DNA of 64,000 nt, from the IMG/VR virus record IMGVR_UViG_3300023174_000036, positions 292,313 to 356,312 of that record; one strand, written 5' to 3'. A model generated the notes under the pieces. That model saw nothing but the letters and a program-made list of their open reading frames with translations. It searched no databases and was not told where the DNA came from. Each line of letters opens with the position of its first letter. Positions within the stretch are counted from its first letter, which is position 1. Of this stretch, positions 24,583 to 57,987 are shown piece after piece. Both the position numbers and the translations under genes were made by a program.

Positions 24583-24993
24583 TTATTCTACTGATTCTTT
24601 ATCAAAGTAGTCTGGATGCTGTTTGCCCCAGTTGCGCATGATTACGGCGGCCTGTGCGTTAGCATCATTTTCTTGTGGTGATCCAGTCGAGCCTGCGTCA
24701 TCGTCAGCCAGCTCATCATTCAAGTCTTGTTTGAAGTGTACCATTTCGTGTGCCAATGTTCTACAGATATCGTTGATGTGACGATTCTTCACAGTAATAG
24801 TGATGTGTTCAGCACCTGGCTGATATCCACCAAATGATTTGCGTTCCACACTTTGCTTTGAATCAAACACAAAGTCAAACTTTGGCAGTGTTTTGAGTTC
24901 CAAGTGTTCAGCGGCAAAGCGCACAAAGTCCAATAGGATTGGATACGTATCCTTTTTACCAAGGCCTTCAGTGAGTATTTCTTTAACTTTCAT
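24583..24993 (-). CDS. HExxH zincin-like protein with capsid-targeting-like leader
   Basis: RTLAHEMVH...ENDANA; MKVKEILTE. Confidence 0.7.
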   Translation of the reverse strand: MKVKEILTEGLGKKDTYPILLDFVRFAAEHLELKTLPKFDFVFDSKQSVERKSFGGYQPGAEHITITVKNRHINDICRTLAHEMVHFKQDLNDELADDDAGSTGSPQENDANAQAAVIMRNWGKQHPDYFDKESVE

Positions 24994-28124: not shown

Positions 28125-28406
28125 TTATCGGCTAATAAGTTGTTTGATTGCTTGGAGTAAGCTGTCGTCGGCAGATTTAGTTTCACTGCCAATATTATCG
28201 TCCTGCGTCATTTTGTCAATAACAGGGCTTTCTTTACCTAATTCGGCTTTGTGTAACTCTAAATGCTGTTGTAACGGAGGAACCATTACAGGATTTGATT
28301 GAAACTCTGGCTCGTTTTGTTCTTGGCCTGTTGAAATTTCAGGCTCGCCATCACCATTAATCTTAATGTTGATTGGAATATTAATAGTGAATTCTTTTGC
28401 TCTCAT
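28125..28406 (-). CDS. small protein with MRAKEF leader
   Basis: MVPPLQQHLELHK motif; late promoter. Confidence 0.65.
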   Translation of the reverse strand: MRAKEFTINIPINIKINGDGEPEISTGQEQNEPEFQSNPVMVPPLQQHLELHKAELGKESPVIDKMTQDDNIGSETKSADDSLLQAIKQLISR

Positions 28407-32638: not shown

Positions 32639-33838
32639 ATGATTAATCACAAACCCTTTGAAGATCTAATACAAAACCTAAAAGATTCAGGAAAATATCG
32701 TGTTTTTAACGATATCGTACGTGAAAACGGCAAGTTTCCTAATGCCATTTGGTACGGACCATACAACATCAAAAACATAGTGAACTGGTGCTCAAACGAT
32801 TATTTGGGTATGGGCCAGCACAAAGTGGTGCTGGATGCCATGCACACAGCACTGGACCATACTGGTTCGGGTTCTGGCGGTACTCGCAACATTGGCGGTA
32901 CCAGTCACTATCACGTGGCTCTGGAGCATGAGTTGGCAACGCTACACAAGAAAGAAAAGGCAGTGTTGTTTAGTTCAGCTTATGTGGCCAACGAATGGAC
33001 GCTGATTGCACTGGCTAAGATTATCCCCAACATTGAATACATCAGCGATGCCAATAATCACAACAGTATTATCATAGGTATTAGTCATAGTAAGGCAAAG
33101 AAAGTTGTGTTCAAACACAACGACTTAGAAGATCTAGAACAGAAACTCAAGATTAGTTTTGCACAAGGCAATACACCTTGCGTGGTATTTGAATCAGTTT
33201 ACAGCATGGATGGCGATGTGGGACACATCAAAGAAATATGTAGATTAGCTGAAAAGTACAAAGCTATAACATACATTGATGAAGTTCATGCTGTGGGCTT
33301 GTATGGTGCAACCGGTGGTGGCAAAGTAGAAGAGCTTGGACTTGAAAACAAAATTGACATAGTCAATGGTACCTTGGGAAAGGCCTACGGAGTTCAAGGC
33401 GGTTACATTGCCTGTGACCGGATTGTGGCTGATGCTATTCGCAGTGTGGCCGCCGGCTTTATCTTTACAACGTCAATGAGTCCAGTAACATGTGCTGGTG
33501 CAATGGGCGCAATCAAATATTTAAAAGCACATCCTGAGATCCGCGAGCGTCATCAAGAACGTGCCGCCACATTAAAACGCAGATTAAAAGAAGCATGTAT
33601 TCCTGTCATGGAGTCAAGTACTAGTCATATTGTGCCAGTATTTGTTGGCGATGCTAAACGTGCTAAAGCCATGAGCGATGCACTGTTAAATGACTATAAC
33701 ATTTATGTACAGGCTATCAACTATCCCACAGTTGATGTGGGAACGGAGCGGTTGCGATTTGCACCTACTCCGTTTCATGATGATGGAATGATTGAAGACT
33801 TAGTTGAAGCATTAACTAAGTTATTTAATACAAACTGA
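32639..33838 (+). CDS. hemA: 5-aminolevulinate synthase (PLP-dependent, Shemin pathway)
   Basis: [69 protein letters not shown]. Confidence 0.93.
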
Positions 33839-34055
33839 TCAGTTGTGTAACACCAAACACTAGAGCCGCGGTAGCTTGTTGATCTGCGGCGCCTTCTTCT
33901 AATTTCTCTGTACTGATCAAATCTTGTAAGATTTCTTTGGCTTCGCTTGGACTCAGTTGTCCAGCACCCACAGCTTCATGTACTTGTAATGCATATTGGG
34001 CACGTTCTGCGGCCCACGGATGACCACTATTCATTAGTTCTGCTAGTACGCTCAT
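33825..34055 (-). CDS. hypothetical protein
   Basis: TAATG-coupled to the upstream lipoprotein. Confidence 0.65.
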
Positions 34056-34438
34056 TAGAATCTCCCTTGTACTGAACCTGTTAAGATTTCAGTTTGTTGT
34101 TTAATAATTTTTACTTTGAGGTCGCAATACAATGGACTTACTGGACCAGTTTTCAAACGATCTTGATACTCTTTAACTGTTGTTGTCAATGTACTTGTTA
34201 ACTTGCTAATATCTCTTGTTGGTTTAGTCTTGGCGTAAATGTCAAACCACTCTACATTTAACGACAATGCATTTAACTGTGCGGCTTGGTCGCCTTTACA
34301 ATCAAAGTGATTAACTTGTACTTGTATGTCTGTAATTACTTTTGCTTGGTTAACGTCCCAACGACTTGGAATCTTTTCCATTATGCCGGCACAGCCTGTT
34401 AAACTTAAAAATGCTATAATTGTTATTAGTTTTTTCAT
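34055..34438 (-). CDS. lipoprotein
   Basis: Lipobox LTGC after hydrophobic signal. Confidence 0.75.
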   Translation of the reverse strand: MKKLITIIAFLSLTGCAGIMEKIPSRWDVNQAKVITDIQVQVNHFDCKGDQAAQLNALSLNVEWFDIYAKTKPTRDISKLTSTLTTTVKEYQDRLKTGPVSPLYCDLKVKIIKQQTEILTGSVQGRF

Positions 34439-34845
34439 TTTGCTTCATCATCCGTAATTGGTCCACCGACTACCCAAGCATCGCATGTGCGTAAGCTGGC
34501 ACATTTGAATTTTAAAAACTGGCAATAGCCTAAATCACCTGCACCTATTGTTGCTTTGGCATCTACATCGCCTATGCCTTTTTCTATACAGTCTAGAACT
34601 TTTGACGTTTGATCAAATGCCGCGCAGTTGCCGCATCTTGATTGTTTAACTGATTCTATATCATCAGTGTTCCATTTGTCAGCAATGCGTTGCCAGTATT
34701 CGTCATTGGGCAGTTGTGGATTCAATGGACCGTAGTTGTTTTCATCAATGGCCTTCTGACGATTCTTTAAATTCAGTTCAATGTCCTGTGTTGCGGGTGG
34801 ACAGCCTTTTTCCAAAGCTTCAATTAGTGTTATAAAGTTTCTCAT
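34435..34845 (-). CDS. Cys-rich conserved phage protein
   Basis: CPPATQDI, CGNCAAF, GYC..KFKCAS.RTCDAW. Confidence 0.7.
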   Translation of the reverse strand: MRNFITLIEALEKGCPPATQDIELNLKNRQKAIDENNYGPLNPQLPNDEYWQRIADKWNTDDIESVKQSRCGNCAAFDQTSKVLDCIEKGIGDVDAKATIGAGDLGYCQFLKFKCASLRTCDAWVVGGPITDDEAK

Positions 34846-35771
34846 TTGTGTTTAGCTCTTCCTGCTTTCATGTTAGCTAGCCAATGTGCCAGCTGTCCTT
34901 TACGTCCGCCTTGTTTGGCAGTTTTACGTAATGAACTTATACTTGCTTTAGTATTAATGCCGTGGCGTTTGGCATCTCCCTTGTCTTGTGGATTACGTCC
35001 ATCAGCAAAGTTCTCATCTCGTTTGGTATATACTTGCTGTGCTTTTCTATCAATTTCGCCACGTTCTATTTTATCAGGGTCTTTGGCTTTTTCTTTTTCA
35101 AAGTACTTACGCATTTCTTCCGAAGACACTTTGGGTTTCTTAGCTACCTTTGTTGGTGTTGTTAAGAAACCCATTATACCTTCGTTTGTTCTATGATATT
35201 CGCTTGCTTCGCCTTCTAGACTAACGTGCCAAGCATAGAACTTAGTCTGCGGATACTCATCTTTGAGTTCCACAAACGATTCTAAGTTAGGCACAGCATC
35301 ATCATACATGATAGCTTTTGTATAATGTCCTTGGTCCATTAACTTACGAATAATAATCTTTTTCTTTTCTTCTGTTTGCATTTTGCCGGTCATGTTGCCC
35401 GCACGGTACACATGCACTTTGCCCATGTCTACTCCATACTTGCGGAATGTATCAAGAAATAGTTCTTTATCGTCAAAGTCAGCACGGGCAGTTACCATTA
35501 CCACTTTGTTACCTGTGGCAATGTCATGCTTTAACTGATCCATCATTGGTATAATTGGTTTACTGTTATGAAAGAAATCGTGTGCGTTGCGAAAGTTTTC
35601 AAAGTCAAAAGTTTCGCCGGGTTGTAGTTTGTAGTGTGTGAAGTCGTGACTATTGAGTTCTTTAATAACTTGACCATCTTTGATTACATTTACTTTTGTC
35701 TGGGTATGAACAAGAGTGTCATCTATATCAAAGATAACCAATTTCTTTGGCTGAAACTCTTGTGCTCTCAC
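34842..35771 (-). CDS. HAD-family phosphatase fused to basic C-terminal modules
   Basis: FDIDDT, VTAR, K, MYDD; MRAQEF leader. Confidence 0.78.
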   Translation of the reverse strand: MRAQEFQPKKLVIFDIDDTLVHTQTKVNVIKDGQVIKELNSHDFTHYKLQPGETFDFENFRNAHDFFHNSKPIIPMMDQLKHDIATGNKVVMVTARADFDDKELFLDTFRKYGVDMGKVHVYRAGNMTGKMQTEEKKKIIIRKLMDQGHYTKAIMYDDAVPNLESFVELKDEYPQTKFYAWHVSLEGEASEYHRTNEGIMGFLTTPTKVAKKPKVSSEEMRKYFEKEKAKDPDKIERGEIDRKAQQVYTKRDENFADGRNPQDKGDAKRHGINTKASISSLRKTAKQGGRKGQLAHWLANMKAGRAKHK

Positions 35772-36473
35772 TTAGCAATTCCATTTACGCAGTGCTAGAG
35801 CTTTGCGTGTTGGCTTACCGTTGGGTTTTTTCATTGGGCCTTTGACTCCGCCCATTCTAGCACAGAATGATTTACGACGCTTGGCTGCTTTACTGCCTGA
35901 TTTTAGTTTGCTGGGTTTTGTTGTTACGGCCATTTGCAGTTTGCTACCTGGATTCTCTCTGCGATAGCTGGCAACACCTTTGGCATTTAGGCCGCCTTTC
36001 TTACTCTTACCTGCACTCCTACGCCAGGCAGCAGATTCGTCTAGTAATTCGTGATCATCAACTGATTCAAAGTCTTCCCAAATTTGTTCTGTATCAACAC
36101 CATGTGCTTCTGCAAGTGCTTCTACCATTTCTTCAATTATGTCAAACAGTTGGTTAGGATCTATACTTTCATTGGGCACACAGTTGCGTACCTGGCCGCC
36201 ATTCTTGCCTTTCTTAGTGCCAGCGGCATGATGTCCTGGCCAGCATTTGGTTACACCGTTTGAATCTTTGGCACCTTTTTTGATTTCATTCAGTGTGCCG
36301 TGCGATTGGCACATGCCGCAATCTTCACAAACCATCTCCATTTCAACGGATTCCGTGTGCTTCTTTTTGCCAGCACAATGAGCCTTTTGACTAAAGCCTT
36401 TAGGGTGTGAGCAGTTAATACTTTTCTTGTACTTTTGACTCCATCCTTCAGTAATAAATTCAGTTGCTCTCAT
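35772..36473 (-). CDS. modular basic head-internal protein
   Basis: MRATEFITE leader; several short Cys/Lys-rich modules. Confidence 0.7.
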   Translation of the reverse strand: MRATEFITEGWSQKYKKSINCSHPKGFSQKAHCAGKKKHTESVEMEMVCEDCGMCQSHGTLNEIKKGAKDSNGVTKCWPGHHAAGTKKGKNGGQVRNCVPNESIDPNQLFDIIEEMVEALAEAHGVDTEQIWEDFESVDDHELLDESAAWRRSAGKSKKGGLNAKGVASYRRENPGSKLQMAVTTKPSKLKSGSKAAKRRKSFCARMGGVKGPMKKPNGKPTRKALALRKWNC

Positions 36474-36611: not shown

Positions 36612-37427
36612 TCAGTCAGCTTTGCCACATTTTGCTCTTTTTGCGTTTGTTAATGCTCCAAAATCAACTGGCCATTCTTGCCCTGGCGCTAGTTCAACAG
36701 CACCAGCTGGAAATTTATAGTCAACTCCTGCTAGTTTTTCTATTTCTACAATGGGCTTGCGGAACACAGTAAGGTCATTGCCCAAATTAACGTAAGGTTT
36801 GGTATGTGGAAATACCCATCCAGCAATTTGTCGAGTTTGATTGTTAATTACAATTTTGTAGTAGCCATGCGGAACAATAACTCCGGCGCCAATTGTAGGA
36901 TCACCAGCGCCATATAATGCTCCCACGAATACGGTATAACTCTGGTTGGTTTGAACTGCCCAACCTCGGACGGATGTCTCCAACAATTTCCAAATTCCCC
37001 TGTTTAAAGAGCCGTGTTGAGGGTACATGTTTGTCATTAAAAAACTTTCATATTCCACTTGTTGGCTCCAGCTTAGGTCGCCGTCTGGAGCGGCATGTCC
37101 TTTGTCGTAACCAGTGCCAGCATAGTCATCTGGTCTAGCACCAGTTCCGCCTAGACTTTGATCAGCTACAAATGCATTGGTGCGTGGAAAACAACCCAAT
37201 GCGTTTTGTGGCAACAGTGTGTAAGCCACATAAACTGGAATCTTTACTGGAGCATCATATGCCACTAGATACGCTTCTCTGCAAATAGGTTGTGCTGTGC
37301 GGGCTGTTTGAGCAAAGCCGTAAGGGCTGTGGACAGCGCAGGCTTGTACGGGTAATGGAGCACGTTGCTCCCAGGCTTGGGCCAATCCTGCTGTAAACAG
37401 CAAGATCAAAGCTAATAATCGTTTCAT
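36612..37427 (-). CDS. secreted DNA/RNA non-specific endonuclease (NucA/Serratia type)
   Basis: Signal peptide; YDKGHAAP, TNMYPQ..LNRGIWKLLE, VPHGYYK. Confidence 0.9.
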   Translation of the reverse strand: MKRLLALILLFTAGLAQAWEQRAPLPVQACAVHSPYGFAQTARTAQPICREAYLVAYDAPVKIPVYVAYTLLPQNALGCFPRTNAFVADQSLGGTGARPDDYAGTGYDKGHAAPDGDLSWSQQVEYESFLMTNMYPQHGSLNRGIWKLLETSVRGWAVQTNQSYTVFVGALYGAGDPTIGAGVIVPHGYYKIVINNQTRQIAGWVFPHTKPYVNLGNDLTVFRKPIVEIEKLAGVDYKFPAGAVELAPGQEWPVDFGALTNAKRAKCGKAD

Positions 37428-38140: not shown

Positions 38141-38575
38141 TTAAAAACTGTTATTGAACCAGCCTATCTTACGGCCTTCTGCAATACGCTTGTCATGTTC
38201 TTCTACACTGCCTGGAAAACGCCATGCCCATACAGCTACCAACAACATGAATATGCCTGTGTAGACTACACCTTTAACTGGCACAGTAAAGCTCATGATA
38301 ATCAAACTAGTGCTCATCATGGCCAGCATAAAATATTTCATCTTTGTAGGGAACACACGTTTTTCTCCCCAGTTGGTTAGAAACGGGCCAAAGATCTTGT
38401 GGTTATACAACCAGGCATGCATTTTAGGCGATCCTTTGGCAAAGCAATAGGCCGCAAATACTACAAAGCAACTGTAAGGTATGCCTGGTGTGATTAACCC
38501 CACATAGGCCATGCCTAGGCTTAAAAAGCCTAGGACTTTCCATAAAAATTGTTTTACTTTAGATATTGTAACCAT
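38141..38575 (-). CDS. YbaN/DUF454 family inner-membrane protein
   Basis: GFLSLGMAYVGLITPGIP..F...AAYCFAKGSPKMHAWL..HKIFGP. Confidence 0.85.
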   Translation of the reverse strand: MVTISKVKQFLWKVLGFLSLGMAYVGLITPGIPYSCFVVFAAYCFAKGSPKMHAWLYNHKIFGPFLTNWGEKRVFPTKMKYFMLAMMSTSLIIMSFTVPVKGVVYTGIFMLLVAVWAWRFPGSVEEHDKRIAEGRKIGWFNNSF

Positions 38576-39066
38576 TCGGTATGCCTTACGTTGAACTCTT
38601 GCTTCTTGCGCTTATTTACAAGATTGTAGTAGTCTGGCTTGTAAGGTTTGACTCTTGGCTTGATACCCAGTTTGTCGCTCTTGTGGCTGTTGCATGGTCC
38701 ACAGGCAGTTACACAGTTATCCCATGTGGTCTTACCGCCTTTAGATACTGGCAACACATGATCTAATGTAGCAACTTTGCGTTCTATTTCGCAACCGCAA
38801 TACTGGCATTGTCCATCGTCACGCAGGTATACATTGGATCTACTAAATCTAACTGTAGTTTTGATTTTCATGTAGTCGCGCAGAATGATTACGCTGGGCA
38901 CTGGTGTTTCCCAACGTGCTGAACGTACTACCCAATTGTCGTGCCAATGCAATACAACAGCCTTATCCAAGACCATGTATTTGATTGACTCTTGCCAATT
39001 GATTGTGCTTAACGGTAGTACACTAACTGGTAAACCGTCAGCGTTGAGAACTAAACAGTCTGACAT
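38554..39066 (-). CDS. HNH endonuclease
   Basis: LVLNAD, RDDGQCQYCG, TLDHVLPVSKGG...NCVTACGPCN. Confidence 0.92.
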   Translation of the reverse strand: MSDCLVLNADGLPVSVLPLSTINWQESIKYMVLDKAVVLHWHDNWVVRSARWETPVPSVIILRDYMKIKTTVRFSRSNVYLRDDGQCQYCGCEIERKVATLDHVLPVSKGGKTTWDNCVTACGPCNSHKSDKLGIKPRVKPYKPDYYNLVNKRKKQEFNVRHTEWLQYLK

Positions 39067-39135
39067 TTCTTTTCTTCTAAATGGGGTTATTACAGAAACA
39101 ATTATAACTTCACTTTGTATTTAAGTCAAGATCGA

Positions 39136-39684
39136 TTACAATAATATGTTTTGGGCAAATTCTAAACCGCTTTGGTCCAATGCACTGCACCATTGTTCTT
39201 GTTGATCGCTACCAAAAATTAAATTTAAATTTGATTTGGTCAAACACCAACTATTTTCTTTGGTCCACGGTGCTTTGCCTTCGATTTCACTGTCCAACTG
39301 TCCCACAGCCCATCCGCACATACCAAGGAATATTCTATAGTATTCGGGCCTGTCCCCTGATGCTAGTCTGTGTATCATATCACCAGTACTGCTAAGTGAT
39401 AGTTCATTGGATATGCGCAATGTATTTGAAGTACGCCATTCGCTTGAATGAAGCATGGTTAGGCTCTGACTGTTTACTGGGCCACCTACATAGATATAAC
39501 CGGGCAAATCTATGTCACAGTTCATCTGCTGGCCAAACTCAACAATACTCAGAGTGCTACGTTTGTTTAGTACAAACCCTACACTGCCTGCGGCGTGATG
39601 TTCAGTGACAGCAATTACAGTTTTATGCCAGAAATTGTTTTTTACTGCGGGTGGGGCGATTAATAAGGTACCTGCTAGATTCAT
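39136..39684 (-). CDS. YqgE/AlgH family protein
   Basis: GTLLIA, GFVLNK, GGPV, FLGMCGWAVGQLDSEI. Confidence 0.88.
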   Translation of the reverse strand: MNLAGTLLIAPPAVKNNFWHKTVIAVTEHHAAGSVGFVLNKRSTLSIVEFGQQMNCDIDLPGYIYVGGPVNSQSLTMLHSSEWRTSNTLRISNELSLSSTGDMIHRLASGDRPEYYRIFLGMCGWAVGQLDSEIEGKAPWTKENSWCLTKSNLNLIFGSDQQEQWCSALDQSGLEFAQNILL

Positions 39685-39707: not shown

Positions 39708-41024
39708 TTAAGCAGATTTTTTATCTGTTCCTGAACCAAATAAACGCATTGCACTTTCAGCAAATCCCAATCTTTCAGGATAACTTTTTGGACTGGCCAC
39801 TTCATATTTGTTCATAATAATCTCAACACATTTTGCAAGATTATTTTTGTTAGCTTCTAATTCAGGCAATACGTGTTTGTATTTTCCAGTCAGCTCATGC
39901 CATGTGAAATCTAATTGCAATTCAAGATCATGCCATTTCTTTTTAAGTTTCTTTGCAAAATTAGCAAGATTTTGTAGCCTATCCATGCGCCATTGCACGA
40001 TACCTCTGGCATTTTCGTTTTTGTTGTGTGCGGCGGTATTAACTCTTGACTCAGTGTAAATATTTCCAACAAATGCCGCACACTGATTATCATTAAGTCC
40101 TTTGCCTTTGAAAAACTCAAATACATCGCTGGCCGAATCAACATTTCTTATTTCATATTTGCCTGAAGATCGTTTCTTGATTGGTGCAGGTGATGGTGCT
40201 GTATCTGGCTTTACATCTGGCTTTACATCTTGTTTGGGAGCTATTGCAGTACTACCACTTGATGGAATTGATATAACATCACCAGGATAAATTCGATCAG
40301 GGTTTTTAATTTGTTTATTGGCGGCAATCAAATCTGCCAATGCAACACCGTGAGCTTTGGCTATCTTAGTAAGATTGTCTCCAGATACCACAGTGTAATC
40401 GCCAGTAGAAACTTTTGGAGATTGATTTGGTTTAACAACATCAGGAGTAATTATGTCGGCTTTTGCAACATTAGAACCAGCCGCTAGCAATTTTTTATAA
40501 CCGCCATATGGGTGAATGCCATCGCCTTTTCCACTATGCATACCCGAGTCGTAGTCTTCTAATGGGCCAAGAAAAGTTGCGCCAAACGATTGTGCCATTG
40601 ATTCCAATCGTTCGTTAACTCCGGTTAAATCAACTCGATATTTTTTGCCGCCGGTCCAACTTGTTCCTGGAAATGCTATTGACTTAGTACTACCTGTTCC
40701 TACCAGTGCTACTGTTGCACCTGCAGCCTTGAGAGCTTTCAATTGGTCTTCAACTGGTTCCAATCCGCCATTACCTGTTTTTTTAATTCCACCTTCTAAT
40801 TCAATAGGAGAACTATTACTTGCTCCACTACTTAAGATAACAGTGGCACCTTTGGCTTTTCCAGATTTAATAAATGCATTAACTCGTTTTAAAACTTCAA
40901 CGGTGGATATGCCACCTTTTGCATAAGGCTCGCTGCCTCCAATACCAACAGCAATGCTATCACCTATGATAACAACAGACTGTTTATTTTCTTTTAAAAC
41001 TAATTTAAATTCTGTAAATCTCAT
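39708..41024 (-). CDS. SGNH-like + LysM + phage tail lysozyme-like protein
   Basis: IIGDSIAVG...DGIHP; YTVVSGDNLTKIA...NPDRIYPG; GNIYTES...GIVQW...QLDF. Confidence 0.82.
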   Translation of the reverse strand: MRFTEFKLVLKENKQSVVIIGDSIAVGIGGSEPYAKGGISTVEVLKRVNAFIKSGKAKGATVILSSGASNSSPIELEGGIKKTGNGGLEPVEDQLKALKAAGATVALVGTGSTKSIAFPGTSWTGGKKYRVDLTGVNERLESMAQSFGATFLGPLEDYDSGMHSGKGDGIHPYGGYKKLLAAGSNVAKADIITPDVVKPNQSPKVSTGDYTVVSGDNLTKIAKAHGVALADLIAANKQIKNPDRIYPGDVISIPSSGSTAIAPKQDVKPDVKPDTAPSPAPIKKRSSGKYEIRNVDSASDVFEFFKGKGLNDNQCAAFVGNIYTESRVNTAAHNKNENARGIVQWRMDRLQNLANFAKKLKKKWHDLELQLDFTWHELTGKYKHVLPELEANKNNLAKCVEIIMNKYEVASPKSYPERLGFAESAMRLFGSGTDKKSA

Positions 41025-42007
41025 CGTTGATTCTTCCTTGTGCCGTAGTCGGGCAAAGGCCCACCATACTTACGTCCCTTAATCTTTTTGCCGCCAACAG
41101 TCACACGTACTTTACGTTTACCAGCAGTAATTAAATGACTCTTCTCGCCGTCCCTTGCCCGGAGTCCTTGACTTTTACAACTGGCTAATTGGCTTGCACC
41201 TAACTCGTGATCAGGTTTGCCACCAGTACATAATGCACGACTTGCTTTGCCTTCTTCTGCCAAGTCATCTGGAGTATCAACACTTGCTACATATTGATCA
41301 GCATTGCCTTCAATATCCGCTTCAGCTCTTTTGTTTAGACTGGATGGTATACCTTTCTTTAATTTTTCAATATAGGCCTTAAATGCCGAAATACGTTCTG
41401 TTAATCCATTGGTGCCGCCATTAACTCTAACTGATACACCATGTATGTCGTTGGCGCGATAGTTGGGTCTGATAAATGTATTCCAGAACCACAATGCTGA
41501 ATCAGCGGCAACTTGTTTATTTGTTGCAACTAATTCAGGATTCTTAACAATATTTTTGCAGGAAGGAACTGCGGCCGCACATTTGGTATAATTCTCTCTA
41601 CCAGTCAAGTGCATGAATCCTCTGCCTTTGAATAAAGGTCCGTCGCCTCTGTATTTGTTACCAAGTATTAGTTTGCCTTCGTATGCAGAACCATCTGCCC
41701 ATTCTTCTAAACTAGTGAACCCAGCTGTTTCAACTTTGGACTGTGCCATAAAGTTAGCTAACTGTACGCCTTTGATGCCATCGGCTTTGGCTTTGGATTC
41801 AATGTATGCACCTAAGCCTTTAGGTTCCAATGCAACATGTATTGGCGGAGTTCCAGCAGGACGTTGAGGTTTAGCGTTATTAGGTTTAGGTGCGGGTGTG
41901 GCATTTTTAGACTGCGCCGTTAACCGGTTTGCTAAGTCGCCGATTGGATCCACGGTGTCTCTGGTAGGCCCATCTCTTTCAAATAAAATAAAATCTTTAG
42001 CTCTCAT
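41021..42007 (-). CDS. GH19 chitinase/lysozyme-like protein with basic C-terminal module
   Basis: FMAQSKVETAGF, FKGRGFMHLTGRENY, SALWFW, VNGGTNGLTER. Confidence 0.87.
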   Translation of the reverse strand: MRAKDFILFERDGPTRDTVDPIGDLANRLTAQSKNATPAPKPNNAKPQRPAGTPPIHVALEPKGLGAYIESKAKADGIKGVQLANFMAQSKVETAGFTSLEEWADGSAYEGKLILGNKYRGDGPLFKGRGFMHLTGRENYTKCAAAVPSCKNIVKNPELVATNKQVAADSALWFWNTFIRPNYRANDIHGVSVRVNGGTNGLTERISAFKAYIEKLKKGIPSSLNKRAEADIEGNADQYVASVDTPDDLAEEGKASRALCTGGKPDHELGASQLASCKSQGLRARDGEKSHLITAGKRKVRVTVGGKKIKGRKYGGPLPDYGTRKNQR

Positions 42008-42391
42008 TTAGACCCCGTATTGATTACGTTTTGGTTTGGATACAGGACTAACTGTATTAACATCTGTTTCTGTACTCTTACTACTGGCAATACGGGTAGC
42101 TTTAACTCCCATTAGTTTATCTGCAAGTCTAATAGTTTCTTCATCGTCGGGAGAAAATGTTATTAATGATAAGTTTTCTGCCCATGCACTTTCCTGATCA
42201 AAATCTATATCATGATCCTTGTTGGCTCTTGCCGCCGCTATTGCCATACCATAACGATATTGCATGTAAGGGTCTGTGTTACGCAAGTCTCGTTGTACAA
42301 ACGCACCAGGCAAACTGTTAGATACTTGTGCATCCACTTTGCCAAATTTACCGTGTAGTTTAGTTTCTGGAAGGAATTCTTTAGCTCGCAT
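42008..42391 (-). CDS. hypothetical protein with MRAKEF leader
   Basis: NTDPYMQYRYG, VNTVSPV..PKRNQYGV. Confidence 0.7.
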   Translation of the reverse strand: MRAKEFLPETKLHGKFGKVDAQVSNSLPGAFVQRDLRNTDPYMQYRYGMAIAAARANKDHDIDFDQESAWAENLSLITFSPDDEETIRLADKLMGVKATRIASSKSTETDVNTVSPVSKPKRNQYGV

Positions 42392-43038
42392 TATGCTGTG
42401 TTCCTCATAGGGTCTACTGGTCTACCAGCAACATGTGTTTCCCAATGTAAATGCGGTCCAGTGCTGTGTCCAGTATTGCCTGACAACGCAATCACTTCTC
42501 CAGCAGTAACCTGATCATTGGTTTGAACTAAAATTTTAGAAAGATGGAAGAATTTATGCACAACTCCGTCAGCATCCAGTATTACATAGTTGCCTTCACC
42601 ACTTTTCGAACTGCCAGCGCCGGTAACTACTCCATCCGCTGGCGCAACTACCTTGGTACCTGTAGGTACTGAAAAATCTGTACCGTTATGATTGCGGGCC
42701 GAGCCTACACTAGTTCTGTAACCGAATGGACTAGATACTGGCCCTTCAACTGGTACAATTGATGGTTCTTGTTTGCTTAATATCCTGCGAGCTGGGCGAT
42801 TCTTTTTTTCGTATGATTTAATTGCAAGAGGATCTGGTTTTTGAGTGTCTTTAGGATCTATGCCCTTGGCATAAGCATCTATAGCGGCTTGGGTATAAGG
42901 ACCTACAATGCCGTCTACACCGTCTCCATTGGGTCCGTACGGACCTAGATCATAGCCCAGATCTCGCAACTTTTCCTGAGTTTTTACAACGGCAGGGTCA
43001 CTAGTGGCTTCTAAAATAAGGAATTCTTTTGCTCTCAT
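42391..43038 (-). CDS. PG-binding domain + M23 metallopeptidase
   Basis: DGIVGPYT; HNGTD, HLS, GNTGHSTGPHLH. Confidence 0.9.
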   Translation of the reverse strand: MRAKEFLILEATSDPAVVKTQEKLRDLGYDLGPYGPNGDGVDGIVGPYTQAAIDAYAKGIDPKDTQKPDPLAIKSYEKKNRPARRILSKQEPSIVPVEGPVSSPFGYRTSVGSARNHNGTDFSVPTGTKVVAPADGVVTGAGSSKSGEGNYVILDADGVVHKFFHLSKILVQTNDQVTAGEVIALSGNTGHSTGPHLHWETHVAGRPVDPMRNTA

Positions 43039-43859
43039 AATTTATATTTATCAAGCCATTCCTCCAAAGTGATCCAACGCTGGGTTCCTATGCTGTCTTC
43101 TAACTTAGATGTGTCTGAACAAGTGTATGTTTGATAGCTGGATTTGAGAATTTCAGGCATTTCTATGTATTCTATGGAAGAATCATACTTTCTACTGATT
43201 AAATCTGCAACATGTTGAAAACTAATAGCTTTACCAGTTCCAATGTTCCATACACCAGAATCTTTGACACGTTTGATATATTCTACGTGTACCCTACAGA
43301 TATCCTCAACAGCAATAAAATCACGTAGGTAATTATCACTGTTGTGAAATAGTTTAATCTTACCAGACTCTGCTTGTTTGCTGAATTGGCTTACAGGACT
43401 GCCTTGATTACCTTTGTGTTCTTCTTGGTTGCCGTACACATTAAAATATCGGAAACCTTGTACTATATTGCCGCCTTGGTGTTGCTTGTGATAATATTCA
43501 CACAGGTACTTGCTCCATGCGTATGGCGTACGGGGATCTGGCATTGCTGTTTCTTTAAAGTCTGTGCCAAATCCGTAAACACTTGCACTACTGCTGTATT
43601 GAAAATTAACGCCGTATGTTTTACAAGCATTGAACAACTGTCTAGTAAAGTCTACATTTTGTCGCATTACTTTATCTAAATCGCGTTCTGTTGTACTGCT
43701 GATTGCACCTATATGTATTACCCAATCTTGTTCCATTACACTGGGCATGTTGCTGTCACCCCATTCATATAGATCCACACTCCAGTCTGTGTTGTCGTAG
43801 ATGTACTGCACTAAATTTTGTCCTATGAATCCTTTGTAACCAGTTACCAATACTCTCAT
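43035..43859 (-). CDS. hldD: ADP-L-glycero-D-manno-heptose 6-epimerase-like (copy 1)
   Basis: TGYKGFIG, GAISSTTE, YSSSASVYG, YAWSK, FRYFNVYG..EEHKG, YQTYTCSD. Confidence 0.85.
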   Translation of the reverse strand: MRVLVTGYKGFIGQNLVQYIYDNTDWSVDLYEWGDSNMPSVMEQDWVIHIGAISSTTERDLDKVMRQNVDFTRQLFNACKTYGVNFQYSSSASVYGFGTDFKETAMPDPRTPYAWSKYLCEYYHKQHQGGNIVQGFRYFNVYGNQEEHKGNQGSPVSQFSKQAESGKIKLFHNSDNYLRDFIAVEDICRVHVEYIKRVKDSGVWNIGTGKAISFQHVADLISRKYDSSIEYIEMPEILKSSYQTYTCSDTSKLEDSIGTQRWITLEEWLDKYKL

Positions 43860-44960: not shown

Positions 44961-45371
44961 TTATGACTTTCGTTTACGATTAGTTCGTTTGACAGCTGGC
45001 GCAGTGCTTGCTGGTTTGGCTTGACTATCACCGGGCATCACTCGGTAGTTGTCTTCCACACTGTCAGGAGTACTGACTTCAATTATGATACCTTGTTTGA
45101 TACAGATCAACTGATGCGGCTCCAGTGGAAAGTTTCTCCAAGTATCACCTTCATTAAGTATCTTGCTGTGCATACTTGCATCTTTGGTATCGATATACTT
45201 TACTTCAAACTGGCCTTCTAACACAAACCAAGTTTCGTCTTTCTCATCATGAAAGTGCATACTGAACTTTGCACCTTGTTTGAAGTACATGAGTTTACCG
45301 CAATATAAATCGTTGGTGGCAAATATCAGTTCGCCGCCCCATCCTTTTTCAACTTGTCCTTCAAGTCTCAT
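44961..45371 (-). CDS. cupin sugar isomerase-like protein
   Basis: KGWGGELI, SMHFH..KDETW, EVSTPDSVEDNYR. Confidence 0.75.
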   Translation of the reverse strand: MRLEGQVEKGWGGELIFATNDLYCGKLMYFKQGAKFSMHFHDEKDETWFVLEGQFEVKYIDTKDASMHSKILNEGDTWRNFPLEPHQLICIKQGIIIEVSTPDSVEDNYRVMPGDSQAKPASTAPAVKRTNRKRKS

Positions 45372-46185
45372 AATGTAACCACTCGAATACGTTTAACCAT
45401 TTTCTTTTTCCTATTGTCTCTTTTAGTTTAGTAAGATCTGCTTGCGTCTTCCAACGCATAGACTTGGCATACTCAGCACTTACAGGTTCAAATTCAATAG
45501 AGACCTTTTCCTGCTCTGCTATTTCTTCCGCAATATCTAAGAAACTGTGTGACAGTCCAGTACCTACATTCCATATGCCCGAACCATTCACTGTTTTTAT
45601 AAAATCTATCTGTAGTCGACACACATCTCCGACCCATGTCCAATCACGTTTTACTGTTTCGGCATTTTCCCAAACTGTGATCTTGCCTTCCTTACGAGCT
45701 TGTTCTCTCCATTTGTGTATAACATTGGACCGCTTGTCACGCAGGTGCATGTACTTGCCGTACACATTGAAGTATCTAAATCCCTGCACCATCACATGTT
45801 GCTCTTGTTGGAACACCCAACGATCAAATAGATATTTGCTCCATGCGTAAGGTGTATCGGGTTTGCACGGAGCATACTCGCTGAAGTCTTTGGTGTCACC
45901 GTACACACTACTTGAACTGGCATATTGCAAGTGTACGCCATGTCTATTACATTCTTCAAACAGCCATTGGCTAAACTCATAATTTTGTATCATGACTGCA
46001 TCAATATCCTTGGCAGTCATATCGGCTACGGCGCCCAAATGTATGACCCAGTCATACTCAATTACATTTGGTTTGCTTTTTGGATCCCAGTCCCATCCTT
46101 CAACTTGCCATCCTTCTTCAGCATGGCACCAGTCCATCATGTTTCGGCCAATGAACCCTTTGTAGCCCGTTATCAAAATCTTCAT
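45361..46185 (-). CDS. hldD: ADP-heptose 6-epimerase-like (copy 2)
   Basis: TGYKGFIG, YASSSSVYG, YAWSKYLFD, FRYFNVYG. Confidence 0.8.
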   Translation of the reverse strand: MKILITGYKGFIGRNMMDWCHAEEGWQVEGWDWDPKSKPNVIEYDWVIHLGAVADMTAKDIDAVMIQNYEFSQWLFEECNRHGVHLQYASSSSVYGDTKDFSEYAPCKPDTPYAWSKYLFDRWVFQQEQHVMVQGFRYFNVYGKYMHLRDKRSNVIHKWREQARKEGKITVWENAETVKRDWTWVGDVCRLQIDFIKTVNGSGIWNVGTGLSHSFLDIAEEIAEQEKVSIEFEPVSAEYAKSMRWKTQADLTKLKETIGKRKWLNVFEWLHYET

Positions 46186-56949: not shown

Positions 56950-56992
56950 AAGTTTCAAGGTAGAAGGCAAATGTCTAAGACAATCCTCATAA
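56813..56992 (+). CDS. 59-aa overlapping protein (not in ORF track)
   Basis: GGAG SD; MMWLLILIAVHVNDPTDQPGRVELQFADQKTCEQAL...KCLRQSS. Confidence 0.6.
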   Translation: MMWLLILIAVHVNDPTDQPGRVELQFADQKTCEQALSTLKWQLKFKSFKVEGKCLRQSS

Positions 56993-57987
56993 TAACAGAC
57001 AATTTAAAGGATCAAATCAATGGCGTGGTTACCACCTACAAAAATATTGAGGCGTGTGCAACTCGTGACGGTTATAACGTTGTGGTGCTGGATCCCGGGT
57101 GGTTCAGCTACATTGATTGCCCTGGCTACAACGAAGTCAAGATTGCCTATCCCAGGAACTTGGGCAAGAAGATTGAGGAGATATCTCCGGATTATATCCA
57201 TATCGCCACAGAGGGTCCTCTTGGTCTGTGGGCTAGAGCATATCTTTCATTGGGTGATATTCGCCACAATACCGCTTATCATACTAAGTTTCCTGAAGGG
57301 TTGAAAAAGCTGTTTGGCATACCTGAAAGCCTAACGTGGCGTTTTGTACGTTGGTTCCACAAGCATTCAGGCAAGGTCTTGACCACAACACCCAGCATGG
57401 TTCGTGAACTCAAGTCGCATGGCTTTGGGGGTGAAGTTATACCCTGGACCCGTGGCGTGGATCGTGATATCTTTAACCCCAGCTATCGAGTCAAGACTGT
57501 GGTAAACGGTCCCGTATTGTTGTGTGTCAGCAGGGTCAGCAAGGAAAAGAATCTAGAAGCCTTCTTTGAATTGGACTACCCAGGTGCCAACAAGATCATG
57601 GTGGGCGATGGCCCCATGTTGGACACTTATCGAAAGGCCTACCCTGACGTCATGTTCACAGGCTTTAGGACTGGAGTGGACCTAGCACGTTACTATGCCA
57701 TGGCAGATGTGTTTGTGTTCCCCAGTCAGTGGGAAACGTTTGGCATTGTTATGATAGAAGCCATGGCCTGTGGCACACCTGTAGCCGCTTACCCATGCCA
57801 GGGTCCAGAGGATGTGATTGATGAGGGTGTAACTGGCTGTTTAAATGACGAGCTCAAGCAGGCTGTGAAAGATGCCTTAATGTTGAGCCGACAGCAGGTT
57901 TGGGAAGGCAGTGCCCGTTGGACTTGGCAAGAAGCGTGGCACATATTCCGTGACAATCTAGTGGAAATGAAATCGGGTACAAGATAA
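56971..57987 (+). CDS. GT4 glycosyltransferase (Agt-like glycolipid synthase)
   Basis: QINGVVTT, IHIATEGPLG, YHTKFPE, WTRGVD, RVSKEKN, ETFGIVMIEAMACG. Confidence 0.88.
   Translation: MSKTILIITDNLKDQINGVVTTYKNIEACATRDGYNVVVLDPGWFSYIDCPGYNEVKIAYPRNLGKKIEEISPDYIHIATEGPLGLWARAYLSLGDIRHNTAYHTKFPEGLKKLFGIPESLTWRFVRWFHKHSGKVLTTTPSMVRELKSHGFGGEVIPWTRGVDRDIFNPSYRVKTVVNGPVLLCVSRVSKEKNLEAFFELDYPGANKIMVGDGPMLDTYRKAYPDVMFTGFRTGVDLARYYAMADVFVFPSQWETFGIVMIEAMACGTPVAAYPCQGPEDVIDEGVTGCLNDELKQAVKDALMLSRQQVWEGSARWTWQEAWHIFRDNLVEMKSGTR

What the first reader, a model, noticed from the sequence alone, without database searches (positions are those of the whole stretch)
34842..36473. Putative polyproteins of short basic, Cys-containing peptides separated by Glu cleavage sites
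Seen: 35772-36473 reads as beads on a string: tag-ITE|GWSQKYKKSINCSHPKGFSQKAHCAGKKK ... LNE|IKKGAKD..KCWPGHHAAGTKKGKNGGQVRNCVPNE| acidic helical block LDE|SAAWRRSAGK...RRKSFCARM...LRKWNC. 34842-35771 appends TNE|G... and RDE|NFADGRNPQDKG...HWLANMKAGRAK to a HAD domain. The GH19 protein appends LAEE|GKASRALC...SCKSQGLRAR... (about 41021-41260). The modules are K/R-rich and nearly Glu-free internally, and several have a Cys pair. Inference: the prohead protease releases them as individual injected peptides (DNA-binding, anti-defence or host-takeover effectors), and modules shuffle between carrier genes.
Basis: partly seen in the sequence, partly recalled or inferred. Interest (0 to 1): 0.72.

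Follow-up and report, generated by a model that had tools for sequence, protein, structure and literature searches.

The report
Tagged, shuffled phage head-cargo polyproteins
A 356-kb uncultured jumbo phage encodes proteins that start with a T4-like capsid-targeting tag and consist of interchangeable small basic modules and enzymes, joined at hydrophobic-x-Glu junctions that match the cutting site of the phage's T4-type head protease; this points to a natural one-tag, many-cargo way of loading the phage head, but cleavage has not been shown.

Summary
The 233-aa protein (35772-36473, minus strand) is tag, M1a, M1b, M2, acidic block, then DUF6321. The HAD protein (34842-35771) ends in a 56-aa basic module N. 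The GH19 protein ends in a 77-aa basic module G.

Each module recurs in hundreds to thousands of metagenomic proteins, on unrelated carriers and in different orders. Carriers include deaminase, NUDIX, HAD, lysozymes, M23, GNAT and HExxH proteins.

The residue before a module is Glu in 65/65 (M1a), 70/75 (D) and 99/99 (N) distinct contexts. P3 is hydrophobic in 73-96%. Where a module directly follows the N-terminal tag, the tag's Glu is that same Glu. One relative encodes only tag plus N.

N is single-copy in 16 of 16 related records. About 65-87% of carriers bear the tag M-[RK]-x-x-[ED]-[FIL], which resembles the T4 capsid targeting sequence MKTYQEFIAE. The genome encodes a T4 gp21-type (S77) prohead protease.

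Best reading: these are capsid-targeted polyproteins cut by the prohead protease. Module shuffling is shown. Targeting, cleavage, injection and peptide function are inferred. I rate it a new variant of the T4 internal-protein system.

The parts
35772..36473 (-). 233-aa modular protein: tag, M1a, M1b, M2, acidic block A, DUF6321
   Evidence: ORF. DUF6321 at 78.6 bits against a cut-off of 28.5. About 8000 homologs and 5095 representatives at 50% identity.
36447..36473 (-). N-terminal tag MRATEFITE, resembling the T4 capsid targeting sequence and ending in I-T-E
   Evidence: T4 CTS is MKTYQEFIAE (PMC8442874).
36351..36446 (-). Module M1a (residues 10-41): basic, with an invariant Cys pair
   Evidence: Glu precedes it in 65/65 contexts and P3 is L/V/I/M in 60/65. 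It also occurs inside the 815-aa protein of Synechococcus phage S-SCSM2R.
36285..36350 (-). Module M1b (residues 42-63): acidic, with a C-x2-C-x2-C-x2-H motif
   Evidence: The three Cys and the His are invariant in alignment A1. Composition.
36168..36284 (-). Module M2 (residues 64-102): basic C-W ... N-C-V-P beta hairpin
   Evidence: Matches six PHROG families at varying positions. Duplicated or inserted in relatives. Predicted as a hairpin by AlphaFold2.
36036..36167 (-). Acidic helical block A (residues 103-146), net charge -16, ending L-D-E
   Evidence: Relatives carry variable inserts exactly at its N-terminal edge.
35775..36035 (-). Module D (residues 147-233): DUF6321, net charge +25, Cys pair that includes the C-terminal Cys
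   Evidence: Single copy in this genome and in 5 relatives.
35181..35771 (-). HAD-superfamily phosphatase core carrying the tag MRAQEF, with no Glu site after the tag
   Evidence: Pfam Acid_phosphat_B, weak, E 1.1e-4; phrog_415. The motif FDIDDT starts at residue 14.
35013..35180 (-). Linker module H2 (residues 198-253), from TNE|G to RDE|N
   Evidence: Found with N on HAD and deaminase carriers: 30 of the proteins scanned.
34845..35012 (-). Module N (residues 254-309): 56-aa basic three-helix module
   Evidence: 2274 proteins; 90-98% identical across unrelated carriers. Glu precedes it in 99/99 contexts. One copy in 16 of 16 records. AlphaFold2 pLDDT 73.
41255..42007 (-). GH19 glycoside hydrolase core carrying the tag MRAKDFILFE
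   Evidence: Pfam Glyco_hydro_19; phrog_181 endolysin.
41024..41254 (-). Module G (residues 252-328): basic, Cys pair, following L-A-E
   Evidence: 388 proteins. Carriers include M23, Phage_lysozyme2, DUF6321 proteins and sigma-70 region 4 proteins.
39708..41024 (-). Tagged (MRFTEF) protein with LysM and Phage_lysozyme2 domains
42008..42391 (-). Tagged (MRAKEFLPE) 127-aa protein of unknown function
42391..43038 (-). Tagged (MRAKEFLILE) M23 peptidase with a peptidoglycan-binding domain
28125..28406 (-). Tagged (MRAKEF) 93-aa protein
24583..24993 (-). Tagged (MKVKEILTE) 136-aa HExxH protein; the same HExxH module follows module N in relatives
   Evidence: weak Peptidase_M91 match.

Best explanation
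These genes encode head-internal cargo of a Rak2/GAP32-like jumbo myovirus.

Proposed mechanism:
1. A roughly 9-aa N-terminal tag, M-[RK]-x-x-[ED]-[FIL]-Phi-x-E, works like the T4 capsid targeting sequence and takes the whole chain into the assembling prohead core.
2. The chain is a string of independent units: enzymes, small basic Cys-pair modules and acidic spacers. Each unit is bounded by a hydrophobic-x-Glu site.
3. The phage's T4 gp21-type (S77) prohead protease then cuts after those Glu residues.
4. The tag and the acidic spacers leave the capsid or are degraded.
5. The basic peptides (M1a, M2, DUF6321, N, G) and the enzymes stay with the packaged DNA and enter the host with it.

Because a module only needs to sit downstream of some tagged protein, evolution moves modules freely between carriers while keeping about one copy of each per genome.

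Shown here: the modular architecture, the shuffling, the junction motif, the tag, single-copy status, and the presence of the protease.
Inferred: capsid targeting, cleavage, retention and injection, and that the basic peptides act on DNA.
For: 1. Junction motif. Glu at P1 in 65/65 (M1a), 22/25 (M2), 70/75 (D) and 99/99 (N) distinct contexts, with P3 L/I/V/M/F in 73-96%. Module G follows Phi-x-E plus 0-2 residues. Homology-block ends fall exactly on Phi-x-E 80 times out of 409, against about 12 expected.

2. The tag's Glu is the module's Glu. Examples are MRAYEFVIDE|NFADG, MKIKEIINE|NFADG and MRANEFLPE|EGKASR. A gene of only tag plus N exists in L032.

3. Internal modules also end in x-x-E...KTNE|A...KHE|S...LEE|G.

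4. Carriers are unrelated: PF00383, PF00293, PF03767, PF00959, PF01551, PF18013, PF10463, GNAT and HExxH proteins. The carrier is swapped in place: a deaminase replaces HAD in a relative whose 233-aa protein is 94% identical. Module order is permuted in relatives. A module inserted in relative P0049 lies on a different ORF in this genome.

5. N is single-copy in 16 of 16 records, in reading frames of 67 to 769 aa. DUF6321 is single-copy in 6 of 6.

6. The tag is on 85%, 65% and 87% of the three carrier sets. The MRAxEF DNA pattern occurs 5 times in this genome and not once in the reversed-pattern control. It shares the E-F-I-x-E core of the T4 CTS MKTYQEFIAE. In T4, residue 7 contributes to targeting and residues 8 and 10 to processing.

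7. An S77 protease is present. It is 32% identical to T4 gp21, including the shared HP and GVSSRG motifs, and lies in T4 gene order: portal, protease, scaffold, MCP. The MCP has L-L-E|S where T4 gp23 has L-T-E|A.

8. Among 372 ORFs, the largest Phi-x-E excess belongs to the scaffold, then the 233-aa protein, then the protease, then two tagged proteins.

9. A DUF6321-carrying homolog in cyanophage S-P4 is annotated as a virion structural protein. Related jumbo coliphages show internal, DNA-embedded protein in bubblegrams (PMC7247149).
Against: - There is no proteomic or biochemical evidence of targeting or cleavage for any member.
- Several junctions in this genome have a non-hydrophobic P3 (HTE|S, PNE|S, TNE|G, RDE|N).
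- AlphaFold2 places the A|D junction inside a continuous helix.
- The HAD carrier has the tag but no Glu site after it, and the HAD fold starts at about residue 11, so that tag cannot be removed.
- Cyanophage carriers of DUF6321, such as S-P4 gp060 and S-SCSM2R gp176, lack the tag.
- The nearest cultured relative by MCP that was tested, Vibrio phage 2.275.O, has neither the MRAxEF pattern nor DUF6321.
- Distinct upstream contexts are not phylogenetically independent, so the junction counts overstate the statistical weight.
- The Phi-x-E excess per ORF (p = 0.003-0.03) would not survive correction for 372 tests.
Confidence: 0.6

Rival explanations
1. The proteins are uncleaved multidomain virion or internal proteins. 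The basic modules are DNA- or capsid-binding domains that act in cis. The conserved Glu is the first residue of each module or a helix cap. Hydrophobic-x-Glu is a linker signature, or a by-product of recombination at module edges.
For: AlphaFold2 runs a helix through the A|D junction. Some junctions lack a hydrophobic P3. In cyanophages the modules sit at the C-termini of very long untagged proteins annotated as structural. The acidic block A and D usually travel together.
Against: Five unrelated modules share the same upstream motif. The hydrophobic P3 lies in the non-homologous carrier sequence, where recombination alone would not create it. The tag's own terminal Glu doubles as the module's Glu. 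A domain acting in cis should track its enzyme, yet N sits on more than 10 unrelated enzymes, stays single-copy per genome, and also stands alone behind a tag.
Confidence: 0.22
2. The N-terminal motif is not a capsid-targeting signal. It could be a translation-initiation or mRNA feature, or a cassette for recombination. The proteins would then be cytoplasmic enzymes with nucleic-acid-binding tails.
For: dCMP deaminase, NUDIX and HAD carriers look like ordinary nucleotide-metabolism enzymes. The HAD tag cannot be cleaved off. No virion data exist for this clade.
Against: The tag codons differ at synonymous sites between genes (AGA/CGA, GCA/GCT, GAA/GAT, TTT/TTC), and the upstream DNA is unrelated. 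Conservation is therefore at the protein level. The tag shares the E-F-I-x-E core with the experimentally defined T4 CTS. The tagged set includes three peptidoglycan hydrolases in a row, typical of virion-delivered enzymes.
Confidence: 0.1
3. The chains are processed, but by a co-packaged zincin-like HExxH protease: the tagged 136-aa protein at 24583-24993, whose module is fused after N in relatives. This would resemble the MPTase of polyvalent proteins rather than the action of the S77 prohead protease.
For: A tagged HExxH protein is present, and the same module is fused downstream of N in P0172, P0207 and L009. Polyvalent proteins are proposed to be processed by embedded metallopeptidases (PMC5512222).
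Against: Cutting after Glu with a small or hydrophobic P3 is the hallmark of T4, phiKZ and SPN3US prohead proteases (PMC5694885). The HExxH match to a peptidase family is weak (E 0.0025, below the cut-off).
Confidence: 0.05

Closest known systems
Phage T4 internal proteins IPI, IPII, IPIII and Alt, with the capsid targeting sequence (CTS)
   Same: A roughly 10-aa N-terminal tag with an E-F-I-x-E core that ends in a gp21 site. The cargo is basic. Cargo varies between related phages. A gp21-family protease is encoded in the same gene order.
   Different: T4 internal proteins are cut once, next to the CTS, and are single units. Here the chains carry several units, each bounded by Phi-x-E, and the units move between carriers. 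The cargo includes 30-90-aa Cys-pair peptides and metabolic enzymes. No sequence similarity to IPI-III was seen.
T4 core proteins gp22, gp67 and gp68, cut by gp21 into short fragments and internal peptides
   Same: Several gp21-type cuts within one chain yield small peptides (PMC5694885). In this genome the scaffold has the highest Phi-x-E excess.
   Different: Those are assembly proteins whose fragments mostly leave the head, and they are not combinatorially shuffled. Here the pieces are conserved, basic, single-copy modules.
Inner-body and ejection proteins of phiKZ, 201phi2-1 and SPN3US
   Same: Many head proteins are processed after Glu at a short motif by a gp21-related protease. Propeptides carry redundant sites.
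   Different: The motif there is A/S/G-x-E. The proteins are large and no modular bead architecture has been described. The phage lineage is different.
Polyvalent proteins (Iyer et al. 2017, PMC5512222)
   Same: Several effector domains in one polypeptide, packaged in the head and proposed to be processed into separate units. Lysozyme, GNAT and metallopeptidase domains recur.
   Different: Polyvalent proteins are very large, have 2-15 globular domains and an embedded MPTase. Here the proteins are small (60-770 aa), carry a T4-type tag, and processing would be done by the prohead protease. Their signature domains were not tested here.
Pfam DUF6321 (PF19846)
   Same: Residues 155-231 of the 233-aa protein match at 78.6 bits.
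   Different: Pfam gives no function. No paper in the searched library mentions it. Its position as one bead among several, its preceding Phi-x-E and its single-copy status are new observations.
Adenovirus core proteins pVII and pre-mu, cut by adenain (recalled from memory, not checked here)
   Same: Highly basic DNA-associated peptides released inside the capsid by the maturation protease.
   Different: An unrelated virus, protease and cleavage motif. This is an analogy only.

Membership tests
T4-type CTS-directed head internal proteins | Roughly 10-aa N-terminal targeting peptide resembling MKTYQEFIAE | tested here: met
   MRATEFITE, MRAKEFLPE, MRAKEFLILE and MRAKDFILFE share the E-F-Phi-x-E core. 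The DNA pattern occurs 5 times, against none for the reversed control.
T4-type CTS-directed head internal proteins | The tag ends in a prohead-protease site (hydrophobic-x-Glu) | tested here: met
   Met for the 233-aa, GH19, M23, 127-aa and 136-aa proteins. Not met for the HAD protein, whose tag runs straight into the HAD fold.
T4-type CTS-directed head internal proteins | The genome encodes a gp21-family (S77) prohead protease | tested here: met
   PF03420 at 91.9 bits. 32% identity to T4 gp21, including the HP and GVSSRG motifs.
T4-type CTS-directed head internal proteins | The protein is packaged in the capsid and the tag is removed by the protease | not testable with these tools
   Needs virion mass spectrometry or a packaging assay. 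The complex prediction returned no answer.
T4-type CTS-directed head internal proteins | Sequence homology to T4 IPI, IPII, IPIII or Alt | tested here: not met
   Pfam, PHROG and PDB searches give only DUF6321 and unnamed PHROG families.
Pfam DUF6321 (PF19846) | Score above the Pfam gathering threshold | tested here: met
   78.6 bits against 28.5, covering profile positions 1-72 of 72. 80.7 bits on the genome.
Polyvalent proteins | Large polypeptide with several globular effector domains plus an embedded MPTase or head-packaging domain such as MuF | tested here: not met
   Of 107 carriers scanned, 103 show only DUF6321 in Pfam. The window proteins are 93-438 aa with at most one enzyme domain.
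HAD-superfamily phosphatase (carrier of module N) | Motif I (D-x-D-x-T) and a family profile match | tested here: inconclusive
   FDIDDT is present at residues 14-19. Acid_phosphat_B scores 22.2 bits, below its cut-off of 27. phrog_415 matches at 1e-10.

The most novel reading that the evidence does not exclude
A large clade of uncultured jumbo phages uses one N-terminal capsid-targeting tag to load polyproteins. The prohead protease then cuts these into a fixed toolkit of small basic Cys-pair peptides (DUF6321, N, G, M1a, M2), one copy of each per genome, plus optional enzymes. On this reading the peptides are a new class of phage chromatin-like or injected DNA-escort factors, and T4-like cyanophages and pelagiphages share them on other carriers. 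The acidic spacers would act as charge-masking pro-pieces that are discarded on cleavage.
Probability: 0.35. Interest if true: 0.85.

Novelty: new variant of a known kind. Interest (0 to 1): 0.72.

Why it matters
If cleavage is confirmed, four things follow.

1. It would extend the T4 capsid-targeting principle from one tag with one cargo to one tag with a string of cargo units. That explains how head contents can be re-assorted quickly in a virus-host arms race.

2. It would give a first functional context to DUF6321 and to several unnamed module families. These are abundant in metagenomes: 5095 clusters at 50% identity match the 233-aa protein. They also occur in marine T4-like cyanophages and pelagiphages.

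3. It would predict that enzymes such as dCMP/cytidine deaminases, NUDIX and HAD phosphatases are delivered into the host with the DNA.

4. It would provide natural tag and linker sequences for packaging foreign proteins into phage heads.

The junction rule (hydrophobic-x-Glu before every module) is directly testable by re-searching existing virion proteomes for semi-specific peptides.

Tried and rejected
- tblastn of the HAD tail and the GH19 tail against 50,697 isolate phage records found nothing. These two modules are so far known only from metagenomes.
- Pfam and PHROG scans of the separate modules gave no named family apart from DUF6321.
- PDB sequence search gave nothing meaningful.
- Foldseek of the 233-aa model against PDB had no hit with E below 1. 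The viral library returned only DUF6321 proteins.
- I suspected that module N is a SAP/HeH-type DNA-binding hairpin. AlphaFold2 gives three helices, but neither PDB nor Swiss-Prot models gave a significant match, so I dropped the idea.
- The ESM Atlas feature search for N gave only unnamed viral clusters.
- Complex prediction of protease plus the 233-aa protein returned 'no answer', which is neither for nor against.
- Literature searches for DUF6321 and for module motifs found no paper.
- A look-up of T4-GC119 in the supplements of Sullivan et al. 2010 found no occurrence. The 'structural protein' status of the cyanophage homolog therefore rests only on the GenBank annotation.
- Vibrio phage 2.275.O, the second-best MCP match among isolate phages and the only one checked, has neither the MRAxEF pattern nor DUF6321, so it cannot serve as a test system.
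- The first Pfam scan of 150 carriers exceeded the size limit and was repeated with 107.
Full report
WHAT IS THERE

The window is the last 64 kb of a 356,312-bp IMG/VR virus record that is 96% complete. Its major capsid protein is 68-71% identical to those of the Rak2/GAP32/CBB group of jumbo myoviruses. The head genes run portal, a 302-aa acidic-then-basic protein, protease, scaffold, MCP. T4 runs portal (20), 67, 68, protease (21), scaffold (22), MCP (23).

The protease matches Pfam Peptidase_S77. It is 32% identical to T4 gp21, including the shared HP and GVSSRG motifs.

Both ORFs of the finding lie on the minus strand at the stated coordinates. The HAD ORF starts with GTG directly after the stop codon of the 233-aa gene.

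ANATOMY

The 233-aa protein splits as follows:
- tag, residues 1-9
- M1a, 10-41: net charge +7, two invariant Cys
- M1b, 42-63: net -5, motif C-x2-C-x2-C-x2-H
- M2, 64-102: net +6, two Cys
- acidic helical block A, 103-146: net -16
- D, 147-233: net +25, two Cys; this is Pfam DUF6321

The HAD protein is a HAD core, then a linker module H2, then a 56-aa basic module N. The GH19 protein ends in a 77-aa basic module G.

AlphaFold2 models residues 1-66 poorly. It gives M2 as a beta hairpin, A as helices and D as four helices with pLDDT 66-88. N is modelled as three helices with pLDDT 73. No solved or Swiss-Prot structure resembles either model.

THE MODULES ARE INDEPENDENT AND MOBILE

The 233-aa protein has about 8000 close homologs. 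Relatives carry variable inserts exactly after the N-C-V-P-N-E end of M2: a second M2 copy, a Cys-rich block, or a G-L-Y-Y-x-V-N-K-R-K block. In this genome that last block sits on a different tagged ORF, at genome position 167986-168588.

An exhaustive search found 5095 cluster representatives. Their matches begin and end near query residues 7, 64-66, 101-107 and 142-149, which are the proposed junctions.

Module N occurs in 2274 proteins and is 90-98% identical across very different carriers. These include dCMP/cytidine deaminases, NUDIX, HAD, GH24 lysozyme with LysM, GNAT, nucleotidyltransferase, Peptidase_U49, HExxH proteins and DUF6321 proteins.

Module G occurs in 388 proteins. Its carriers include GH19, M23, Phage_lysozyme2, DUF6321 proteins and sigma-70 region 4 proteins.

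In a relative whose 233-aa protein is 94% identical, the gene directly downstream is a deaminase rather than the HAD, with the flanking gene order unchanged. In record G005 one ORF carries D, then M2, then G, a different order from this window. M1a and M2 lie on separate ORFs in G003, G004 and G005.

In T4-like cyanophages, M1a, M2 and D form the C-terminal ends of long basic proteins. One of these is annotated as a virion structural protein.

THE JUNCTION RULE

I counted only distinct upstream contexts.

| Module | Glu at P1 | Hydrophobic P3 |
|---|---|---|
| M1a | 65/65 | 60/65 (L/V/I/M) |
| M2 | 22/25 | 24/25 (I/L/V) |
| D | 70/75 | 72/75 (L/I/V) |
| N | 99/99 | 72/99 (L/V/I/M/F) |

Hydrophobic residues make up 20% of these proteins. 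Module G follows Phi-x-E plus zero to two residues.

As an unbiased check I ran all-against-all BLAST on 150 representatives. Homology blocks end exactly on a Phi-x-E Glu 80 times out of 409, against about 12 expected. Block starts peak at the Phi residue, 158 of 1094 against about 32 expected.

When a module is internal, it also ends in x-x-E.

When a module directly follows the N-terminal tag, the tag's last Glu is the module's preceding Glu. One relative, L032, encodes nothing but tag plus N, 64 aa in all.

THE TAG

Six genes in the window start with M-R-[AF]-x-[ED]-F (five ATG, the HAD gene GTG), and four more start with an M-K variant. The DNA pattern for ATG-started MRAxEF occurs 5 times in this genome, 4 times in a related 340-kb record, never in Vibrio phage 2.275.O, and never in the reversed-pattern controls.

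The tag codons differ at synonymous sites between genes and the upstream DNA is unrelated. The conservation is therefore in the protein, not in the DNA.

The tag is present on 85%, 65% and 87% of the N, 233-aa-like and G carriers. Many of the remaining carriers have close variants of it.

The T4 capsid targeting sequence is MKTYQEFIAE (PMC8442874). In T4, residues 4 and 7 matter most for targeting and residues 8 and 10 for processing (PMC9026906). The F, I and E of the tag here correspond to T4 residues 7, 8 and 10.

COPY NUMBER

N is present exactly once in this genome and in each of 15 related records. The reading frames that carry it range from 67 to 769 aa. DUF6321 is present once in 6 of 6 records. 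G is present once or not at all.

A generic DNA anchor for cargo would be expected on many proteins per genome. A domain that works in cis would be expected to stay with its enzyme. Neither pattern is seen.

LINK TO THE PROTEASE

[quoted passage not shown] It always cuts after Glu (PMC5694885).

Among 372 ORFs of this genome, the largest excess of Phi-x-E over what composition predicts belongs to:
1. the scaffold (27 observed, 15 expected)
2. the 233-aa protein (9 observed, 3.2 expected)
3. the protease itself
4. and 5. two further tagged proteins

Each p-value is modest (0.003-0.03) and would not survive correction for 372 tests. The ranking is suggestive only.

The MCP has L-L-E|S about 25 residues before the conserved P-V-I-R-R-V segment. 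T4 gp23 has its known L-T-E|A site in the matching position. That the T4 site is the gp21 cut is from my own knowledge of T4.

INTERPRETATION

The simplest model that fits all of this has three steps. The tag carries the whole chain into the prohead core. The prohead protease cuts after each Phi-x-E. The basic units and enzymes remain with the DNA, while the tag and the acidic spacers are lost, as in T4.

The alternating charge along the chain (+7, -5, +6, -16, +25) suggests that the acidic segments mask the basic ones until cleavage. That point is inference.

What the basic peptides do is unknown. DNA condensation or escort is the most economical guess, given 20-30% Lys plus Arg. The conserved Cys pairs and the CCCH motif point to Zn binding or disulfides. 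Nothing here tests an anti-defence role.

CAVEATS

- No member of these families has been examined experimentally.
- Several junctions in this genome have a non-hydrophobic P3 (HTE, PNE, TNE, RDE).
- AlphaFold2 draws a helix across the A|D junction.
- The HAD tag cannot be removed, because the HAD fold starts right after it.
- Cyanophage carriers lack the tag.
- The counts of distinct contexts are not phylogenetically independent.
- Complex prediction gave no answer.

COMPARISON AND NOVELTY

The principle of a CTS plus a gp21 cut is textbook T4 biology, and head cargo is known to vary between T4 relatives. Polyvalent proteins are another known way of packing several effectors into one chain (PMC5512222).

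What I did not find described is a combinatorial system of small, single-copy basic modules. Each is framed by the protease motif, rides behind a T4-like tag on interchangeable carriers, and is shared across jumbo phages, cyanophages and pelagiphages. No paper in the searched library mentions DUF6321 or the module motifs.

I rate this a new variant of a known kind. The architecture, the shuffling and the junction motif are well supported by sequence. Targeting, cleavage and peptide function are untested.

Noticed in passing
window 32639-33838 (+): A 399-aa class I/II aminotransferase-fold protein (PF00155, E 7.5e-65) lies on the opposite strand, in the middle of a minus-strand block. By eye its sequence resembles the 5-aminolevulinate synthase / 2-amino-3-ketobutyrate ligase family. 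It may be an auxiliary metabolic gene.
   Followed up: partly
window 36612-37427 (-): A non-specific DNA/RNA endonuclease (Endonuclease_NS) whose N-terminus looks like a signal peptide. A close relative has an SNase-family nuclease near this position instead, so the nuclease appears to have been exchanged as well as the HAD/deaminase carrier.
   Followed up: partly
window 39708-43038 (-): Three tagged peptidoglycan hydrolases lie in one run, interrupted only by a tagged 127-aa protein of unknown function: LysM plus Phage_lysozyme2, GH19, then M23 with a PG-binding domain. This suggests a head-delivered cell-wall-degrading set.
   Followed up: partly
window 24583-24993 (-): A tagged 136-aa protein with an H-E-M-V-H motif and a weak Peptidase_M91 match. 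The same module is fused after module N in relatives (P0172, P0207, L009). It could be a co-packaged metalloprotease or an effector.
   Followed up: partly
genome 82430-83338 (L084:10431-11339, -), outside the window: A 302-aa protein between portal and protease has an extremely acidic N-terminal half and a basic C-terminal half. It occupies the position of T4 gp67/gp68, the precursors of the T4 internal peptides.
   Followed up: no
genome 162221-171987, outside the window: A second cluster of long, Lys-rich proteins that have tag-like N-termini, many Phi-x-E sites, or both. Examples are the ORFs at 167986-168588 and 171616-171987. This is probably another internal-protein locus.
   Followed up: partly
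window 34055-34845 (-): Two small ORFs lie just downstream of the HAD gene. One is a 127-aa predicted lipoprotein with a signal peptide ending L-T-G-C, conserved in relatives. The other is a 136-aa Cys-rich protein with no family match.
   Followed up: no
window 43035-43859 and 45361-46185 (-): Two paralogous NAD-dependent sugar epimerase/dehydratase genes (phrog_540) flank a phrog_8133 gene. A glycosyltransferase lies at 56971-57987. Together they may be a sugar-modification cluster.
   Followed up: no
window 38141-39684 (-): A DUF454 membrane protein, an HNH endonuclease and a DUF179/AlgH-like protein. They are conserved in the same order in a close relative.
   Followed up: no
L011:1820-2107 and L011:2104-3642 (related record G001): Further basic Cys-pair modules appear on tagged proteins. 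One reads D-W-F-K-D-K-W-V-R ... K-P-K-C-L-P. Another has the core W-P-S-A-Y-A-S-G and is also present in cyanophage S-P4 gp060. The module toolkit is therefore larger than the five modules seen in the window.
   Followed up: no
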